Virus record (IMG/VR): IMGVR_UViG_3300020469_003050
Span: 124,001 to 188,000 of that record
Strand: one strand, 5' to 3'
DNA length: 64,000 nucleotides
Shown here: in pieces, positions 2,770 to 64,000 of the stretch
Numbering within the stretch: position 1 is the stretch's first letter
How the letters are laid out: every line of letters starts with the position of its first letter
The notes under the pieces: generated by a model
The model's database searches: none
The model's input: the letters and a program-made list of their open reading frames with translations, nothing else
What the model was told of the DNA's origin: nothing
Position numbers and translations under genes: made by a program

Positions 2770-3543
2770 ATGAAAGAAGTAGTTTTAGTAACAGGTGGTT
2801 TCGACCCATTACATTCTGGTCATATAGAATACTTCAAGTCTGCCAAAGCACTAGGCGATGAACTAGTTGTAGGCATAAACTCAGATGAATGGTTAACTCG
2901 TAAGAAAGGCAGAGCATTTATGAACTTTGCTGAACGTAAAGCAATCATCGAGGCATTAGAAGTAGTTGACAAAGTTATAGACTTTGATGATAGTGATGAT
3001 ACTGCCAGTTACGCATTATATAAGATACAATCTATGTATCCAATCGGTACTAAGTTTACATTTGCAAATGGTGGAGATAGAGGTAATACTACAACACCTG
3101 AATACAAACAGTATGCAGAAATGCCATGGGTTAGATTTGAATTTGGTGTAGGTGGTACAAACAAAAGAAACTCTAGTAGTTGGATACTAAATGATTGGAA
3201 GACACAAAGAACTCATCGTACATGGGGATATTGGCGAGTACTTGATGATAAACAACCTAAGGTTGGGCAGAAGATAAAAGAACTAGTTATCAACCCACGC
3301 AAGAGTTTATCAAATCAAAAACATAGATATAGAAACGAATATTGGTATGTCCTAGAAGGAGATATCATGATTGAACTAGAATTTAACAAGAAAAAAGAAG
3401 CAATCTATCTGCGTCCACATGACACATTCTTAATACCTAAGGAATGTTGGCATAAAACAACGAATATTGGTGATGAACCAGCACATATTATTGAAGTACA
3501 ATATGGTGAAAGTTGTGAAGAATCAGACATTTTAAGAAAATAA
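2770..3543 (+). CDS. cytidylyltransferase-family domain fused to a mannose-6-phosphate isomerase type II-like cupin
   Basis: VTGGFDPLHSGH (HxGH) and FANGGDR; C-terminal RTWGYWRVL and SLSNQKHRYRNEYWYV. Start set at ATG 2770 rather than 2698. Confidence 0.85.
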   Translation: MKEVVLVTGGFDPLHSGHIEYFKSAKALGDELVVGINSDEWLTRKKGRAFMNFAERKAIIEALEVVDKVIDFDDSDDTASYALYKIQSMYPIGTKFTFANGGDRGNTTTPEYKQYAEMPWVRFEFGVGGTNKRNSSSWILNDWKTQRTHRTWGYWRVLDDKQPKVGQKIKELVINPRKSLSNQKHRYRNEYWYVLEGDIMIELEFNKKKEAIYLRPHDTFLIPKECWHKTTNIGDEPAHIIEVQYGESCEESDILRK

Positions 3544-3551
3544 ATCACTCC

Positions 3552-3587
3552 AAAAACTTGACAATATAACGATTCGTGTTATATTAT
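3552..3587 (+). promoter_or_regulatory. early promoter, CGAWTCG class
   Basis: AAAAACTTGACA-atataa-CGATTCG-tgt-TATATT, nearly identical to 43634-43669. Confidence 0.75.
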
Positions 3588-57564: not shown

Positions 57565-59382
57565 TTGTTAAAAATTAAGAATATAACGGTCCGTAACTTT
57601 ATGAGTGTTGGGAACGTAACACAGGCAGTAGACCTGGAACGTGACAACTTAACACTTGTATTAGGTAACAACCTAGACTTAGGTGGTGATGGTTCTCGTA
57701 ACGGTACGGGTAAAACTACACTCATCAATGCATTATCATATGGTATGTATGGTAACGCACTTACCAATATTAGAAAAGATAATCTAATTAATAAGACAAA
57801 TGGTAAGAACATGATTGTTACTATTGACTTTGAATTTAACGGAAGTCAATACAGGATTGAACGTGGACGTAGACCTAATGTATTTCGTTTTATCAGAGAC
57901 GGTATCGATTTAAACGATGGCGGTGGTGATGAAGCACAAGGTGAAATGAGACAAACTCAAACAGAAGTTGATTCTATTATTGGTATTTCTCATTCAATGT
58001 TCAAACACATTGTTGCACTTAATACGTACACAGAACCATTTCTTTCAATGAGAGCAAATGACCAACGTGAACTAATCGAAGAACTATTAGGTATTACTGA
58101 ATTGTCTCGTAAAGCAGAGGCACTTAAAGAAGTAATCAAAGAAACAAAAGACCAGATGAAAGACGAAGAATACAGTCTTAAAGCAAAAGAAGATGCAAAC
58201 ACTCGTATTCTAAAAAGTATTTCAGACATTGAACGTAGACAACGTATCTGGAAAGATAAACACGAAACAGAATTAAAAGAATTAGAGTCAGCCTTAGAGG
58301 CGTTATCTCATGTAGACATCAAACAAGAGATTGCTAATCATCAACTATTAAATGAATTTACCGAAAAGAAATCTAAGTTAGATGAAGCACAACGATGGGT
58401 TGATAGTATCAATACTGATAATCAAAAATTTTCCGATTTAGAAACAAGAGTTATTAGTGATATAGAAAAGATTAAAGACCATAAATGCTTTGCATGTGGA
58501 CAAGAAGTACACGATAGCAAACAAGAAGAAATTCTAAAAGAAAAAGAAGAACTATTAGGTGAAACTAAATCTCATTTAATGGAAAATGCAACTAAGTTAG
58601 AAACACATACATCAGTAATTAGTGAAGTAGGTGAACTTGGTAATAAGCCTACAGTATTTTATGATGATTTAAATGATGCATACGAACATCAAAACTCAGT
58701 TAGTATGTTGAAAGAACAAATCGAAACTAAAAAGAAACAAGAAGATCCTTATACTGAACAGATTAAAGAAATGCGTGAAAGTAGTTTAGAAGAACTAAAT
58801 TACAATACAATGAATGCACTTGTTTCTTATCGTGAACACCAAGACTTCTTAATGAAACTATTAACAAATAAAGATAGTTTTATTCGTAAAAAGATTATTG
58901 ACCAAAACTTATCTTATCTAAACACACGTTTAGAAAAGTATCTTGATAGACTAGGTTTACCTCATGAAGTTAAATTTATGAGTGACTTAACTGTAGAAAT
59001 TACAGAGTTAGGTCGTGAACTAGACTTTGACAATCTATCAAGAGGTGAACGTAATAGACTTATTTTAGGTCTATCATGGGCTTTCCGTGATATATACGAG
59101 TCACTATATAGCACTATTAATGTTCTATTTGTTGATGAACTTATTGATAGTGGAATGGATACGAACGGTGTCGAATCATCACTAGCAGTTCTTAAGAAAA
59201 TGCAACGTGATAGAAATCGCTCTATCTTTTTAGTATCTCATAGGGACGAATTATATGGTCGTGTGACTAATGTTCTTAATGTGATTAAAGAAAACGGCTT
59301 TACTACTTTCTCACAAGAGGATGCAATAGAGGCGGAAACAAATGAAATGACTAAACCACAAGAAGGAGTACCAAATGTCTGA
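57565..59382 (+). CDS. gp46: Rad50/SbcC-like recombination ATPase (gp46)
   Basis: RNGTGKT Walker A, CFAC zinc hook, LSRGE signature, FVDE Walker B. Confidence 0.95.
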   Translation: MLKIKNITVRNFMSVGNVTQAVDLERDNLTLVLGNNLDLGGDGSRNGTGKTTLINALSYGMYGNALTNIRKDNLINKTNGKNMIVTIDFEFNGSQYRIERGRRPNVFRFIRDGIDLNDGGGDEAQGEMRQTQTEVDSIIGISHSMFKHIVALNTYTEPFLSMRANDQRELIEELLGITELSRKAEALKEVIKETKDQMKDEEYSLKAKEDANTRILKSISDIERRQRIWKDKHETELKELESALEALSHVDIKQEIANHQLLNEFTEKKSKLDEAQRWVDSINTDNQKFSDLETRVISDIEKIKDHKCFACGQEVHDSKQEEILKEKEELLGETKSHLMENATKLETHTSVISEVGELGNKPTVFYDDLNDAYEHQNSVSMLKEQIETKKKQEDPYTEQIKEMRESSLEELNYNTMNALVSYREHQDFLMKLLTNKDSFIRKKIIDQNLSYLNTRLEKYLDRLGLPHEVKFMSDLTVEITELGRELDFDNLSRGERNRLILGLSWAFRDIYESLYSTINVLFVDELIDSGMDTNGVESSLAVLKKMQRDRNRSIFLVSHRDELYGRVTNVLNVIKENGFTTFSQEDAIEAETNEMTKPQEGVPNV

Positions 59383-60869: not shown

Positions 60870-60998
60870 ATGTTTAAGTGGCATAAAAAACAAACAGAAT
60901 ATTGGCAAAATAAATTTAATGTAGATTCATATACTATGATGTGGATAGCCTATGTTAAAGGCCTAATTATGGGTTTACTTATTGCTTGGTTTATTTAA
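60870..60998 (+). CDS. 42 aa membrane micro-protein
   Basis: MFKWHKKQTEYWQNKFNVDSYTMMWIAYVKGLIMGLLIAWFI; RBS GGAG. Confidence 0.55.
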   Translation: MFKWHKKQTEYWQNKFNVDSYTMMWIAYVKGLIMGLLIAWFI

Positions 60999-61521
60999 TA
61001 CCTTCAATGCAGTGACGTTCAAATACGTCTGAATTGTACTTCCAAAATTCTTCTGCACTTGTTAGTATCCAACAACCATTCTTCTCAGACTTGTAAGTTA
61101 CACTAATCGGTGAACGCCATCCGAGTCCATTCATACGGTCTTGAAACGCAACATAAGTTCCTATACGATTAAATTTCATAAAGATAATGTTAACATCACT
61201 ATCTTCTGCAATCTCCATAGTTTGTACAATCCAGTCCTCCAAAAGAGGAATTTTTTTATCATACAATAAATGGTGCCAAGGGAATTCTTTATAAAACTTA
61301 CACTCACAGTTAAAGTACTTCCAGTTATCAGGAGGTATAATATCTCCTTTAAAACCTCGTACTTGTCCTTCGCTTAAGTTAGTTGCTCTATGGAAATTAC
61401 TTCCACCTATAAATGCTCCAGAATTAGGGACACGTACAAAACTACCATTATATTTTTCACTTAGAAATTTTGCTTGTTCTCTTTCATATCCAGAACCCTT
61501 AGATTTGCTTTTACTTGGCAT
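60991..61521 (-). CDS. PD-(D/E)xK nuclease, Holliday junction resolvase-like
   Basis: SKGSGYEREQA...RVPNSGA...KGDI...ECKFYK. Confidence 0.8.
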   Translation of the reverse strand: MPSKSKSKGSGYEREQAKFLSEKYNGSFVRVPNSGAFIGGSNFHRATNLSEGQVRGFKGDIIPPDNWKYFNCECKFYKEFPWHHLLYDKKIPLLEDWIVQTMEIAEDSDVNIIFMKFNRIGTYVAFQDRMNGLGWRSPISVTYKSEKNGCWILTSAEEFWKYNSDVFERHCIEGIK

Positions 61522-61659: not shown

Positions 61660-62135
61660 TATTATGAGTCTCTGTCCCGTGAAGAAGCCATAATTGCCCT
61701 GTTGCCAGGACAATTAAAAAATGGCTGTACAGAAAATCTTGTCTTATCTGTCCCTTGCTCATCGCCTCTATGTCTAAGTTAGTCGCTAGTTACGACGGAG
61801 TCGGTTGACGATCCCTCCTTAACTTAGTATTGCATCTTTCGATTCAACGGCACCCTTTATAATCCACATAGATAGAAACTATAAAAAGCAGATAGTGTTA
61901 TAAAAACCTATCATCGGTAATATTATACTAGTCAACCATGTTCTTTAGGAACCATGGCTGTTTTATGATTATGAATACTCTTTGTGGTTTACGAGAAGAA
62001 TGTCAGAATTCATCCTGACTAGTCCGACGGCAAACACTACGTTTGCAGTCTCAATCCCGTGTCGGCAACCCGACAAACGATTCCACTATGTATGCTGAGA
62101 TATTAGTCATTCCCTTTTCCTATTCGCCGAGATAT
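61660..62135 (-). ncRNA. candidate large structured non-coding RNA (~480 nt)
   Basis: GC-elevated, no credible ORF, at least eight stems, GCAA and GAAA tetraloops and G-U pairs that work on the minus strand. Confidence 0.6.
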
Positions 62136-62161: not shown

Positions 62162-62401
62162 TTATAGTATTGGCATTCCTGCCTTTTTACTCATTTCAAA
62201 ATTCTGGTCAATAATCTCATTCAGATGTTTGATATGATTCACTGGCATTTCATGAAGTTCTGAGATAGAAACCCCACCCCTCATGTACCAAGATAATTGT
62301 AACAGATTCTTATGTACCTTGTCAAGTTCTTTTTCAAACTTTTTTTGTTTTTCTGCAATTTCTTCACCGCTGGCGGTTGCTAGCCAGCCTAGGAAAAATT
62401 T
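62162..62401 (-). CDS. -1 frame extension of the gp26-like gene (gp51-like module), no own upstream start codon
   Basis: FLGWLATASGEEIAEKQKKFEKELDKVHKNLLQLSWYMRGGVSISELHEMPVNHIKHLNEIIDQNFEMSKKAGMPIL*; entered via the A_AAT_TTT heptamer. Confidence 0.6.
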   Translation of the reverse strand, partial: KFFLGWLATASGEEIAEKQKKFEKELDKVHKNLLQLSWYMRGGVSISELHEMPVNHIKHLNEIIDQNFEMSKKAGMPIL

Positions 62402-63222
62402 GCAGGATTAATCTCTATATTAACTTTTTGTACATGGTCGCATTCTGGACATTTAAATTCAAAATTGTTTAACGCTTCTGGCTTTTTAGCTATGTCTTTA
62501 ACTCTTTTATCCATATTTGTAACTACTGATGTAGGAACATTAGCAAGAAATTCAATAATTTGTTTCTTGTCAGTGACCTCACCTTCTGGTGTTTCTATCT
62601 TATCGATAGTCTCTGAAATCAAATCAACATTGTATTCAGCTACACGTTTGAAACTTTTGTAAAACTTTTTCGCAAGTTCCAACTCATCCTTATCATTAGT
62701 AATATCATTTTTGACATTATTAACGATTCGCTGTTCTTCAAGCTGGATAAGAGCAACCCGTGTAACACTTTCTAGTGTTGGTGGTCTCATATGGATTGTT
62801 AAATTTTCATATACTACAGGCTCAACCTTATTAATTTCAGGGAACTTGTTTAGTACAAAATCGATATCAATATTGAAATCATTCTTATTCTCACACTCTT
62901 TACATGTATGAGTATATGTGAGATTACTACCGTTTGTTGCGTATTGAATAGCCATATAAAGTGCTTCTGCATCAATGTTGCATAATTTTCTTGCATCTTT
63001 GATACTAGGAACACAACTTTCTATTAAAGAAATCATTGCCTCACCATTAAGAAGTGCATCTGGATTACGCATTGTAATCTCATCGATAGCAGTCATAGGC
63101 ATAACGCCCACTTCTTCAATAATAGTTTGGTCTATTTCTGGGTTAAATTTACCTTTAGTTGGTAAACTAACATATATAGCTGGCTTTCTAAAGTACTTAG
63201 TTAGCGGGTTATCGGTCATCAT
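62389..63222 (-). CDS. gp26: baseplate hub/tail assembly chaperone, T4 gp26-like
   Basis: NPLTKYFRKP...LPTKG...MTAIDEI...PDALLNG...CKEC...CPEC. Confidence 0.75.
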   Translation of the reverse strand: MMTDNPLTKYFRKPAIYVSLPTKGKFNPEIDQTIIEEVGVMPMTAIDEITMRNPDALLNGEAMISLIESCVPSIKDARKLCNIDAEALYMAIQYATNGSNLTYTHTCKECENKNDFNIDIDFVLNKFPEINKVEPVVYENLTIHMRPPTLESVTRVALIQLEEQRIVNNVKNDITNDKDELELAKKFYKSFKRVAEYNVDLISETIDKIETPEGEVTDKKQIIEFLANVPTSVVTNMDKRVKDIAKKPEALNNFEFKCPECDHVQKVNIEINPANFS

Positions 63223-63288: not shown

Positions 63289-63317
63289 TATTATAAACTA
63301 CGAAGTTTAACTTGTCA
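63289..63317 (-). promoter_or_regulatory. sigma70 promoter for the gp26-like gene
   Basis: Minus strand TTGACA-agttaaacttcgtagtt-TATAAT (N17). Confidence 0.8.
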
Positions 63318-63331
63318 AGAGGTATTTTGTA

Positions 63332-64000
63332 ATGGCTGAAGGAAATGTGTATATTGAAGGTATTGATCCTTCGATCCCTGGTTGGGCAACCGAAACTACG
63401 ATGTCCCAAATACGCCAAATACTGGCTGGTTTAGCCGCAGACCAAGGCGCAACTAATAAAGCATTAGACCAAATGAAAAATAGTGAAGGTGGGGATGCCC
63501 AAAAAGCATATAAAGTTTTACATGATACATTGGGAGAAGTTAGACAACAAGGTGCTAAAGAACAAAAAGCTAACCAAGAAGAAAAGAATGATAGAACAAG
63601 GTTAGCTGGACAAAATACTAAAATAGCAGGATACTTTGAACAACTTATAAAACAAAGCGAAATATCAAATGAAATTGCCAGAAGTTCAGCCGAAAGAGAT
63701 AGAGAACAATTTATAAAGAAAACAACTGGTCAAAATCCAAATATCACAGAAGAAATGGCAGGTATGGAATTTGATAAAGAAAAACTTAAGAAAAACTTTG
63801 AAGATGTTAGTGCCGCAGTAGGAAAATCTGCAATCGGTATTTTAGCAAGTACAGGCATGATTAATAGTTTTATGGGCCAACAAACAGAAGACAGATTTAA
63901 TATGGCCCAAGAAATTAGACAGTCAGGTTTAATGGCAGGTTTTGATTCTGTGACTGCTAGTCTTTCAGAAATGTCTGGAATGATTAATGAAAATAACTTT
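63332..64000 (+). CDS. tape-measure-like protein (partial, runs off the right edge)
   Basis: MAEGNVYIEG...WATETTMSQI...; open for 223 codons; helical A/Q/E/K-rich; RBS AGAGG. Confidence 0.6.
   Translation, partial: MAEGNVYIEGIDPSIPGWATETTMSQIRQILAGLAADQGATNKALDQMKNSEGGDAQKAYKVLHDTLGEVRQQGAKEQKANQEEKNDRTRLAGQNTKIAGYFEQLIKQSEISNEIARSSAERDREQFIKKTTGQNPNITEEMAGMEFDKEKLKKNFEDVSAAVGKSAIGILASTGMINSFMGQQTEDRFNMAQEIRQSGLMAGFDSVTASLSEMSGMINENNF

What the first reader, a model, noticed from the sequence alone, without database searches (positions are those of the whole stretch)
62162..62401. Candidate programmed -1 frameshift fusing gp26-like and gp51-like modules (lambda G/GT logic in a T4-like phage)
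Seen: the gp26-like ORF ends GCA AAT TTT TCC TAG, containing the canonical X XXY YYZ heptamer A AAT TTT (62401-62395). Six nt downstream is a GC-rich hairpin GCTGGC-tagcaacc-GCCAGC (62388-62369), anomalous in this AT-rich genome. The -1 frame is closed by TAA two codons upstream of the heptamer, stays open for 77 codons, and has no ATG/GTG/TTG until the middle of WYMRGG. Slippage would give a ~353 aa product alongside the 277 aa one. The gene lies head-to-head with the tape-measure-like gene. Established: long-tailed phages make G and GT tail chaperones by -1 frameshifting, whereas T4 g26 and g51 are treated as separate genes. Inference: gp26/gp51 here are a frameshift-linked chaperone pair.
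Basis: partly seen in the sequence, partly recalled or inferred. Interest (0 to 1): 0.8.

Follow-up and report, generated by a model that had tools for sequence, protein, structure and literature searches.

The report
Frameshifted tail-chaperone gene in a jumbo phage
A marine giant phage very probably makes a short and a long version of its T4 gp26/gp51-type tail-assembly protein from one gene by letting ribosomes slip back one base. The signal is real and strongly conserved, but the principle is already known for phage tail chaperones.

Summary
The gp26-like ORF (63222..62389, minus strand, 277 aa, Pfam PF12322) ends GCA AAT TTT TCC TAG. It carries an in-frame A_AAT_TTT heptamer, a 6-nt spacer and a GC-rich hairpin. 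The -1 frame is open for 79 codons, and its only start codon lies 35 codons in.

Comparative evidence for -1 ribosomal frameshifting is strong:
- All 160 related loci in two separate samples carry an in-frame slippery heptamer at this spot.
- The wobble bases the heptamer needs are invariant even where the amino acid changes.
- The -1 peptide is conserved from the slip site onward, without a conserved start codon.
- The hairpin is kept by rare synonymous codons.
- 18 natural relatives encode the predicted trans-frame protein as one uninterrupted ORF.

T4 gp26 and gp51 are both PF12322 proteins. The extension aligns weakly with the extra C-terminal tail of gp51. So the short product corresponds to gp26 and the long product to gp51.

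The idea is not new. Vladimirov, Gautam and Davidson (2022), which I could not read, reportedly identified the T4-like tail chaperone genes. Two citing papers show that it treats short/long gene pairs and poly-T slip signals.

Verdict: a real, well-supported new member of a known kind, and unannotated in four reference jumbo-phage genomes. No product has been observed.

The parts
62389..63222 (-). Zero-frame gene for the short product: a gp26/gp51-family (PF12322) protein of 277 aa with two CxxC pairs.
   Evidence: ORF. (PF12322, 68.3 bits against a cut-off of 24.5). (PHROG 150, baseplate hub). (invariant C107, C110, C258, C261). (AlphaFold2 pLDDT 85.6).
62395..62401 (-). Slippery heptamer A_AAT_TTT in the X_XXY_YYZ register of the zero frame.
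   Evidence: It is present in-frame in 80 of 80 marine relatives. In 47 of 47 distinct junctions the preceding codon ends in A (GTA, GCA or ATA), Asn is AAT and Phe is TTT. Background use is 36-61%, 67% and 70%.
62389..62394 (-). 6-nt spacer TCCTAG, which contains the zero-frame stop TAG.
   Evidence: In relatives the stop lies 10, 19, 22 or 46 nt after the heptamer start, while the spacing from heptamer to hairpin stays at 5-7 nt.
62369..62388 (-). GC-rich stem-loop GCTGGC-8 nt-GCCAGC, the likely frameshift stimulator.
   Evidence: A stem is predicted in 47 of 47 distinct junctions. The 3' arm uses Ala GCC in 39 of 47 against 5.9% background, and Ser AGC in 35 of 47 against 9.2%. The 3' arm relocates in 8 sequences where the amino acids differ. 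Fixed-register covariation is weak, with a double change at 1 of 6 pairs.
62162..62401 (-). -1-frame extension: 79 codons from the heptamer, 77 of them new residues, ending ...AGMPIL followed by TAA. It forms the C-terminal module of the 353-aa long product.
   Evidence: It is exactly 79 codons long and conserved from the slip site in all marine relatives. It is found fused in-frame to PF12322 in 18 natural proteins. It aligns weakly with the gp51 C-tail. In the fused homologue it is predicted as helices at 256-331.
62353..62405 (-). Extended stem in free mRNA in which the heptamer and spacer pair with the downstream GAAGAAATTGCAG (EEIAE codons). Its role is unknown.
   Evidence: -24.8 kcal/mol, z -4.8. 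At least 4 heptamer bases pair downstream in 28 of 47 relatives, with mean z -3.3.
62296..62325 (-). Internal sigma-70-like match TTGACA-18-TACAAT inside the extension. It is probably a by-product of conserved LDK...LLQL codons.
   Evidence: 11 of 12 matches, but the count for the region equals the shuffle expectation. (at least 9 of 12 matches in 33 of 47 relatives).
63290..63318 (-). Perfect sigma-70 consensus promoter match TTGACA-17-TATAAT upstream of the gene, within the 109-nt divergent intergenic region.
   Evidence: 12 of 12 matches. Not tested further.
63332..64000 (+). Start of the divergently transcribed 745-aa gene, which runs off the window. It is a possible tape measure protein.
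Evidence: No Pfam or PHROG hit. The nearest named Atlas clusters are tape measure families PF20155 and PF10145 at 0.91-0.92, which is a lead only.

Best explanation
One gene makes two tail-assembly proteins.

Most ribosomes translate the PF12322 (T4 gp26/gp51-family) ORF to its TAG and release a 277-aa protein. A fraction pause with tRNA-Asn and tRNA-Phe on A_AAU_UUU, held up by the GC-rich hairpin that begins 6 nt downstream. They slip back one base onto AAA_UUU and continue in the -1 frame for 77 more codons, giving a 353-aa protein with the same N-terminal domain plus a helical C-terminal module.

The pair corresponds to T4 gp26 (short) and gp51 (long), and functionally to lambda gpG and gpGT. 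The shared domain would chaperone the tape measure or hub. The extension on the minor long form would supply the second contact needed to start tail assembly.

What the sequences show: the signal, its conservation, the conserved -1 peptide, natural fused equivalents and family membership. What is inferred: that slippage occurs, its efficiency, and the chaperone role of each domain.
For: 1. Signal conservation. An in-frame A_AAT_TTT occurs in 80 of 80 marine relatives. An in-frame T_TTT_TTC occurs in 80 of 80 loci of a second sample found through the extension, and in Phosso, Atu_ph07, PA5oct and 121Q.
2. Synonymous and wobble constraint. In the marine clade the base before AAT is A in 47 of 47, and the codons are AAT and TTT in 47 of 47. 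In the second clade the codon supplying the first T encodes 7 different amino acids but ends in T in 70 of 70.
3. The -1 peptide is conserved from the slip site. It is always 79 codons long in the marine clade. A -1-frame stop often lies 0-2 codons before the heptamer. The first start codon varies from +12 to +120 nt, and an ATG at the junction occurs in only 11 of 80.
4. Natural fusions. 18 of the 150 listed hits to the extension profile are 319-351-aa proteins with the extension at the very C-terminus, starting at profile position 2-3. All 8 tested carry PF12322. The one junction I checked at DNA level (P0129) reads AAT CTC TTT CGT, with no slippery site.
5. Hairpin. It is predicted in 47 of 47 junctions, is maintained by rare codons and has a relocating 3' arm.
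6. T4 gp26 and gp51 are both PF12322 proteins. The extension aligns collinearly with the gp51 C-tail (probability 74%, E 2.7e-5).
7. Three of four fused loci with enough context have a second, short PF12322 gene directly upstream. This is the two-gene solution seen in T4.
8. Published framework, through paraphrases of Vladimirov et al. 2022.
Against: - No direct evidence of the trans-frame protein exists. No mass-spectrometry or ribosome-profiling data were available.
- The RNA-library contigs do not cover the junction.
- The efficiency of A_AAU_UUU in the unknown host is unknown.
- Formal covariation in the hairpin is weak, and part of the stem's conservation could reflect the W-L...A-S residues.
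- The second clade has no universal downstream structure (mean z -0.38).
- The gene is not next to and co-oriented with the tape measure gene as in lambda, and the neighbour's identity is only a lead.
- No similarity to classical TAC families appears in Pfam, PHROGs, PDB sequences or Foldseek.
- Homology of the extension to the gp51 tail is marginal (probability 36% in the unbiased comparison).
Confidence: 0.85

Rival explanations
1. The downstream module is a separate small protein made by its own initiation. This could be translational coupling or termination-reinitiation at the zero-frame stop, or a near-leaderless 40-aa MRGG... peptide from the internal promoter-like site.
For: Phosso, Atu_ph07 and 121Q have an ATG overlapping the stop (ATGA or TAATG). 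76 of the 150 listed hits are stand-alone ORF calls of 60-80 aa. The TTGACA-18-TACAAT match at 62325-62296 scores at least 9 of 12 in 33 of 47 relatives.
Against: In the window, and in most relatives, no ATG/GTG/TTG lies between the heptamer and WYMRGG. The junction ATG occupies a variable residue (M, I, V, L, G, A, Q, R, T...) and occurs in only 11 of 80. PA5oct has no start codon anywhere in the -1 ORF. The conserved Ile codon of EEI is ATT, ATA, ATC, GTA or CTT, so it is not a conserved AUU start. The 35 conserved codons upstream of the ATG would go untranslated. Natural fusions and gp51 show the module attached to PF12322. The promoter-like count equals the shuffle expectation.
Confidence: 0.07
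2. The frame change happens in the RNA: RNA polymerase slips on the T run and adds a base, so a subset of mRNAs encode the fused protein directly.
For: The second clade and the cultured jumbo phages have runs of 6-7 T. The title of Vladimirov et al. [quoted passage not shown]
Against: The window has only 5 T. The invariant A and AA upstream of the T run (47 of 47) matter for tRNA re-pairing, not for polymerase slippage. A hairpin conserved 6 nt downstream is the classic ribosomal stimulator. Selection for slippage would favour TTT TTT, yet the second Phe codon is TTC. No indels were seen in RNA-library contigs, though contigs drop rare variants and do not cover the site.
Confidence: 0.05
3. 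The frame break is an assembly or sequencing error in a homopolymer, or the gene is a decaying pseudogene of an originally fused gene.
For: Fused versions exist in other lineages, and homopolymer runs are error-prone.
Against: The same arrangement is present in four independent IMG/VR contigs with a 100% identical protein, in 47 distinct junction sequences, and in finished genomes of isolates. Both frames show purifying selection, and the signal itself is under synonymous constraint.
Confidence: 0.01

Closest known systems
Lambda gpG/gpGT and the conserved -1 frameshift of tail assembly chaperone genes in long-tailed phages (Levin, Hendrix and Casjens 1993; Xu, Hendrix and Duda 2004, cited).
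   Same: There are two products with a common N-terminus. The long one is made by -1 slippage on an X_XXY_YYZ heptamer a few codons before the stop. The -1 ORF has no start of its own. The role is in tail morphogenesis.
   Different: There is no detectable sequence or fold similarity to classical TAC families. The N-domain is about twice as large, with two zinc-ribbon-like CxxC pairs. The gene is divergent from, not directly upstream of and co-oriented with, the putative tape measure gene. In this clade a compact conserved hairpin follows the heptamer.
T4 gp26 (baseplate hub subunit) and gp51 (hub assembly catalyst). [quoted passage not shown]
   Same: The family is the same, PF12322. The short product is collinear with gp26 and the long product with gp51. 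The junction motif F-x-LL-x-x-P-D/E-E-I and the tail motif M-x-P-x-E-R are shared with the gp51 C-tail. The divergent arrangement next to other tail and hub genes is also shared.
   Different: T4 uses two separate paralogous genes. T4 gene 26 ends GAG TTC TTT GAG TTA CTA TAA with no heptamer and no extension. The extension here is about 30 residues longer than the gp51 tail and contains the WYMRGG motif, which gp51 lacks. The homology is only marginally significant.
Jumbo myophages Pseudomonas PA5oct, Escherichia 121Q (Rak2-like), Agrobacterium Atu_ph07 and Sinorhizobium Phosso.
   Same: These are the closest cultured relatives, at 29-32% identity. Each has an in-frame T_TTT_TTC at the homologous place and a homologous -1 ORF. 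Synteny with the roughly 750-800-aa structural protein gene is shared in Phosso, PA5oct and 121Q; in Atu_ph07 the upstream neighbours are small ORFs.
   Different: They use T_TTT_TTC rather than A_AAT_TTT. Three of the four have an ATG overlapping the stop. None is annotated with ribosomal slippage. PA5oct leaves the -1 ORF unannotated, and Atu_ph07 annotates only a 40-aa ORF starting at the WYMRGG ATG.

Membership tests
Programmed -1 ribosomal frameshift site | In-frame slippery heptamer X_XXY_YYZ | tested here: met
   A_AAT_TTT lies at 62401-62395. It is conserved in 80 of 80 relatives, with invariant wobble bases.
Programmed -1 ribosomal frameshift site | -1 ORF that overlaps the site, lacks its own conserved start and is under protein-level selection | tested here: met
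   The extension is 79 codons long, is conserved from the slip site, and has start codons that are variable or absent.
Programmed -1 ribosomal frameshift site | Stimulatory RNA structure 5-9 nt downstream | tested here: met
   A 6-bp GC-rich hairpin starts 6 nt downstream. It is predicted in 47 of 47 junctions and shows strong synonymous-codon bias. Covariation is weak. There is no universal structure in the T_TTT_TTC clade.
Programmed -1 ribosomal frameshift site | Trans-frame protein actually produced | not testable with these tools
   No proteomic or ribosome-profiling data were available, and the RNA contigs do not cover the junction. Natural in-frame fusions are indirect support only.
T4 gp26/gp51 family (Pfam PF12322, T4_baseplate) | Significant match to the family profile | tested here: met
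   68.3 bits against a cut-off of 24.5, E 1e-18. Also PHROG 150 and BFVD fold matches to gp26/gp51-type proteins for the fused homologue.
T4 gp26/gp51 family (Pfam PF12322, T4_baseplate) | gp51-type C-terminal tail on the long form (precomputed PF28602 in gp51 homologues) | tested here: inconclusive
   hhalign places the extension on the gp51 tail with probability 36%, or 74% against the trimmed tail. PF28602 is not listed for the fused relatives and is not in the Pfam copy I could scan.
Tail assembly chaperone pair (lambda G/GT type) | Short and long forms sharing the N-terminus, with the long form made by -1 frameshift | tested here: met
   This holds at the level of gene architecture and conservation. 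The products themselves have not been observed.
Tail assembly chaperone pair (lambda G/GT type) | Gene lies immediately upstream of, and co-oriented with, the tape measure gene | tested here: not met
   The gene is head-to-head with the 745-aa ORF. That ORF is tape-measure-like only by Atlas features.
Tail assembly chaperone pair (lambda G/GT type) | Sequence or fold homology to known TAC families | tested here: not met
   There is no TAC family hit in Pfam or PHROGs, no PDB sequence hit, and no Foldseek or VIA-align match above noise.
Tail assembly chaperone pair (lambda G/GT type) | Binds the tape measure and tail tube proteins, and is required for tail assembly but absent from virions | not testable with these tools
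   This rests on T4 genetics for gp26 and gp51 and on Vladimirov et al. 2022, known here only through paraphrases.

The most novel reading that the evidence does not exclude
The window's clade, the T_TTT_TTC clade, the fused-gene lineages with a tandem short paralogue, and T4 with divergent gp26 and gp51 would together document repeated switching between three ways of making a TAC-N/TAC-NC pair. On this reading the frameshifted single gene is the ancestral state of the T4 hub chaperones. The marine clade would have compensated for a weaker A_AAU_UUU heptamer with a dedicated hairpin, embedded in a longer stem that sequesters the slip site in free mRNA and may tune the ratio of the two products. 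If the 2022 paper did not cover jumbo phages or this stimulator, these parts would be new.
Probability: 0.3. Interest if true: 0.6.

Novelty: new member of a known kind. Interest (0 to 1): 0.45.

Why it matters
The finding gives a concrete and very widely conserved example that the enigmatic T4 hub proteins gp26 and gp51 follow the same short-plus-long logic as lambda G/GT.

It also shows that several reference jumbo-phage genomes (PA5oct, 121Q, Atu_ph07, Phosso) lack the long product in their annotation.

It offers cultivable systems in which the ratio of the two forms, and the roles of the PF12322 domain and the extension in building long contractile tails, can be tested.

For the field of recoding it adds a clean natural series: the same protein made by frameshifting, by a fused gene plus a duplicate, or by divergent paralogues.

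Tried and rejected
- **Near DNA match in the phage collection:** none.
- **Solved structures by sequence**, for both modules: only noise.
- **Fold searches.** Foldseek against PDB and Swiss-Prot found nothing. VIA-align wide gave only helical-hairpin matches at Z of 8 or less, within the stated noise.
- **Extension against whole T4 gp51 as a single sequence:** BLASTP E 0.88, hhalign probability 0.6-9%. This was rejected as a test because it lacked power, and I replaced it with a family profile.
- **The search for related loci with the 40-sequence extension alignment:** I repeated it with 12 sequences.
- **Rfam and tRNA scans around the site:** nothing.
- **Metatranscriptome contigs.** The phage is present at 100% identity in four RNA libraries, but the contigs are short, low in depth, and none crosses 62210-62460. 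They say nothing about transcript continuity or T-run heterogeneity.
- **Literature.** The primary paper (Vladimirov et al. 2022) is not held, so what it reports about frameshifting in relatives is known only from two citing papers.
- **Pseudogene or assembly-error reading:** rejected on the comparative data.

Full report
**The observation**

On the minus strand, the 277-aa ORF 63222..62389 ends GCA AAT TTT TCC TAG.
- The heptamer A_AAT_TTT occupies 62401-62395 in the X_XXY_YYZ register.
- Six bases later comes GCTGGC (62388-62383), an 8-nt loop, and GCCAGC (62374-62369).
- The -1 frame is closed by TAA at 62410-62408. It is then open for 79 codons to the TAA at 62164-62162.
- Its first ATG/GTG/TTG is the M of WYMRGG, at 62284.
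- A -1 slip would give ...INPANFFLGWLATAS... and a 353-aa protein.

Every detail in the finding is correct.

**What the gene is**

The ORF matches Pfam PF12322 (T4_baseplate; 68.3 bits against a cut-off of 24.5) and PHROG 150, baseplate hub. No phage in the reference collection is close at DNA level.

By tblastn the nearest cultured relatives, at 29-32% identity, are jumbo myophages: Phosso, Atu_ph07, PA5oct and the 121Q/Rak2-like group. Identical or near-identical copies lie on marine IMG/VR contigs of up to 342 kb. The window therefore comes from an uncultured marine jumbo phage.

The surrounding genes are a gp46-like SbcC ATPase, a PD-(D/E)XK endonuclease, and a divergent 745-aa ORF that starts at 63332.

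**Conservation of the signal: first sample**

I collected 80 IMG/VR loci with the gp26-like protein, at 49-100% identity, which give 47 distinct junction sequences.
- All 80 have the in-frame A_AAT_TTT.
- The zero-frame stop wanders: it lies 10, 19, 22 or 46 nt after the heptamer start.
- The -1 frame always stays open for exactly 79 codons from the heptamer. It encodes KFF[LQRH][GS]WL.[TS]AS..[ED]I...WYMRGGVSI...PIL.
- The first ATG in that frame is usually the M of WYMRGG. So about 35 conserved codons lie upstream of any start codon.

Synonymous sites tell the same story:

| Site | Observed in 47 junctions | Background use in the same genes |
|---|---|---|
| Codon before Asn ends in A (GTA 37, GCA 5, ATA 5) | 47 of 47 | 36-61% |
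| Asn codon is AAT | 47 of 47 | 67% |
| Phe codon is TTT | 47 of 47 | 70% |

**Conservation of the signal: second sample**

I retrieved a second set through the extension rather than the upstream gene. The extension profile led to an alignment of more distant members.
- All 80 of the loci kept have an in-frame T_TTT_TTC at the end of a zero-frame ORF, typically about 280-330 codons where the locus holds all of it.
- Nine of ten such upstream ORFs sampled are PF12322.
- A -1-frame stop often lies 0-2 codons before the heptamer.
- The first start codon lies anywhere from +12 to +120 nt.
- An ATG at the junction (FFR-M-RLL) occurs in only 11 of 80.
- The codon that supplies the first T encodes N, S, T, L, R, D or A, yet ends in T in all 70 distinct sequences. 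This is hard to explain except by selection on the heptamer itself.

The four cultured jumbo phages have the same T_TTT_TTC and a homologous -1 ORF. PA5oct has no start codon in that ORF at all, and the ORF is unannotated. None of the four records annotates a slippage product.

**Natural fusions**

I searched the extension profile against 1.84 billion representative proteins and got 155 hits.
- Eighteen of the 150 listed are proteins of 319-351 aa. In each, the extension sits at the very C-terminus and begins at profile position 2-3, which is exactly the slip junction.
- All eight that I tested carry PF12322 at the N-terminus.
- Their junctions mirror the predicted trans-frame products. For example, ...DLDFCNLFRAKLVSSDEQQI... 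compares with ...DPSHFF|RVMLLQSSPEEI... in 121Q.
- At DNA level the one junction I checked (P0129) reads AAT CTC TTT CGT, with no slippery site.
- AlphaFold2 models one of these proteins confidently as a single unit (pLDDT 89.9, pTM 0.84). The extension forms helices at 256-331.
- In three of four fused loci with enough context, a second, short PF12322 gene sits directly upstream. One of these loci is a 327-kb contig with the same portal, 783-aa ORF and SbcCD synteny as the window.

Lineages without the frameshift therefore make the short and long forms from two genes.

**Relation to T4**

T4 gp26 (208 aa) and gp51 (249 aa) both match PF12322 end to end, with E-values of 8.8e-64 and 3.9e-52. 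gp51 has about 48 extra C-terminal residues. T4 gene 26 ends GAG TTC TTT GAG TTA CTA TAA and runs straight into gene 25. It has no heptamer and no extension.

The extension shows nothing against gp51 as a single sequence. Against a 17-member gp51 family profile, the best hhalign hit falls on the gp51 tail (E 3.7e-4, probability 36%). Against the trimmed tail it reaches probability 74% and E 2.7e-5 over 56 collinear columns. These columns include the junction motif LL..P[DE]EI and the motif Y..SIM.M.P.ER.

I take this as probable but unproven homology. The short product corresponds to gp26 and the long product to gp51.

**The RNA element**

- All 47 distinct marine junctions fold into a stem that starts 5-7 nt after the heptamer. 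Mean free energy is -12.1 kcal/mol for 40 nt, and mean z is -2.5.
- Fixed-register covariation is weak. One of six pairs shows double changes (G-C to A-U in three sequences).
- Codon choice in the 3' arm is strongly biased. Ala is GCC in 39 of 47 against 5.9% background in the same genes, and Ser is AGC in 35 of 47 against 9.2%.
- In eight sequences where the amino acids differ, the 3' arm reappears a few bases further on.
- In free mRNA the heptamer itself pairs with the downstream EEI codons to form a longer stem. In the window this stem is -24.8 kcal/mol with z -4.8. It is present in 28 of 47 relatives. Its role is unexplained.
- The T_TTT_TTC clade has no universal downstream structure (mean z -0.38). 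This fits a more slippery heptamer that needs less help, but that reading is inference.

**Rival explanations**

*Independent initiation.* This is contradicted by the missing or non-conserved start codons, by the conserved codons upstream of any start, and by the fused homologues. The internal promoter-like match (62325-62296) is partly conserved. However, it lies in conserved codons, and such matches are no more frequent in this region than in shuffled sequence.

*Transcriptional slippage.* This is unlikely for a run of five T. It also does not explain the invariant A bases upstream or the hairpin. It cannot be excluded for the clades with 6-7 T.

*Assembly error or pseudogene.* This is excluded by recurrence in independent contigs and in finished genomes.

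**Prior knowledge**

Full-text searches found no paper that describes a frameshift in a baseplate-hub or gp26 gene of jumbo phages. Two papers do cite Vladimirov, Gautam and Davidson (Virology 2022; 566:9-15):
- One says that some T4-like phages carry a short gene and a longer fused gene instead of frameshifting.
- The other says that poly-T sequences are known -1 signals in the TAC-N genes of T4-like phages.

I could not read the paper itself. By my recollection, which I could not check, the genes it names are gp26 and gp51. The concept of a short TAC-N and a long TAC-NC form, sometimes linked by a frameshift, is therefore published. What may be new is the breadth across uncultured jumbo phages, the A_AAU_UUU-plus-hairpin variant, and the missing annotation in reference genomes.

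**Limits**

- No product has been observed.
- RNA-library contigs contain the phage but do not cross the junction.
- Calling the 745-aa neighbour a tape measure rests on Atlas feature similarity at 0.91-0.92 and on the structural-protein annotation (note: ESI-MS/MS) of its PA5oct homologue.
- No similarity to classical TAC folds could be shown.

**Verdict**

It is a new member of a known kind. My confidence in the frameshift mechanism is about 0.85.

Noticed in passing
window 63290-63318 (minus strand): A perfect sigma-70 consensus match (TTGACA-17-TATAAT, 12 of 12) sits upstream of this tail-morphogenesis gene, in the 109-nt divergent intergenic region shared with the 745-aa ORF. This is not what one would expect of a T4-type late gene.
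   Followed up: no
window 62353-62405 (minus strand): In free mRNA the slippery heptamer and spacer pair with the downstream GAAGAAATTGCAG (EEIAE codons). This extends the hairpin into a stem of -24.8 kcal/mol (z -4.8). The same pairing is predicted in 28 of 47 relatives. Its function is unknown.
   Followed up: partly
L098 51-2051; L181 4172-6008; L182 411-2389: Lineages whose PF12322 gene is fused in-frame to the extension carry a second, short PF12322 paralogue directly upstream in tandem. This is the two-gene equivalent of T4 gp26 plus gp51.
   Followed up: partly
L003 (PA5oct) 3331-3558; L002 (Atu_ph07) 3433-3555: There are reference-genome annotation gaps. PA5oct leaves the homologous 75-codon -1 ORF unannotated. 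Atu_ph07 annotates only a 40-aa ORF that starts at the WYMRGG ATG. Phosso and 121Q annotate it as a separate hypothetical protein.
   Followed up: yes
window 61985-62130 (minus strand): The intergenic stretch downstream of the extension folds into three hairpins, and a terminator-like stem with a T-rich tail lies at 62019-62002. The overall fold is not significant (z -1.3). There is no Rfam or tRNA match.
   Followed up: partly
window 62210-62460: In all four marine metatranscriptome libraries that hold this phage at 100% identity, the assembled contigs stop short of the junction region. This may be an effect of low complexity or low depth, and nothing can be inferred from it.
   Followed up: no
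window 60991-61521 (minus strand) and 57565-59382 (plus strand): A PD-(D/E)XK endonuclease (PF24608) lies next to the chaperone gene here and in L182 and L183. A gp46-like SbcC ATPase lies nearby here and in L181, L183, 121Q and Atu_ph07. Recombination genes are therefore a recurring neighbour of this tail gene.
   Followed up: no
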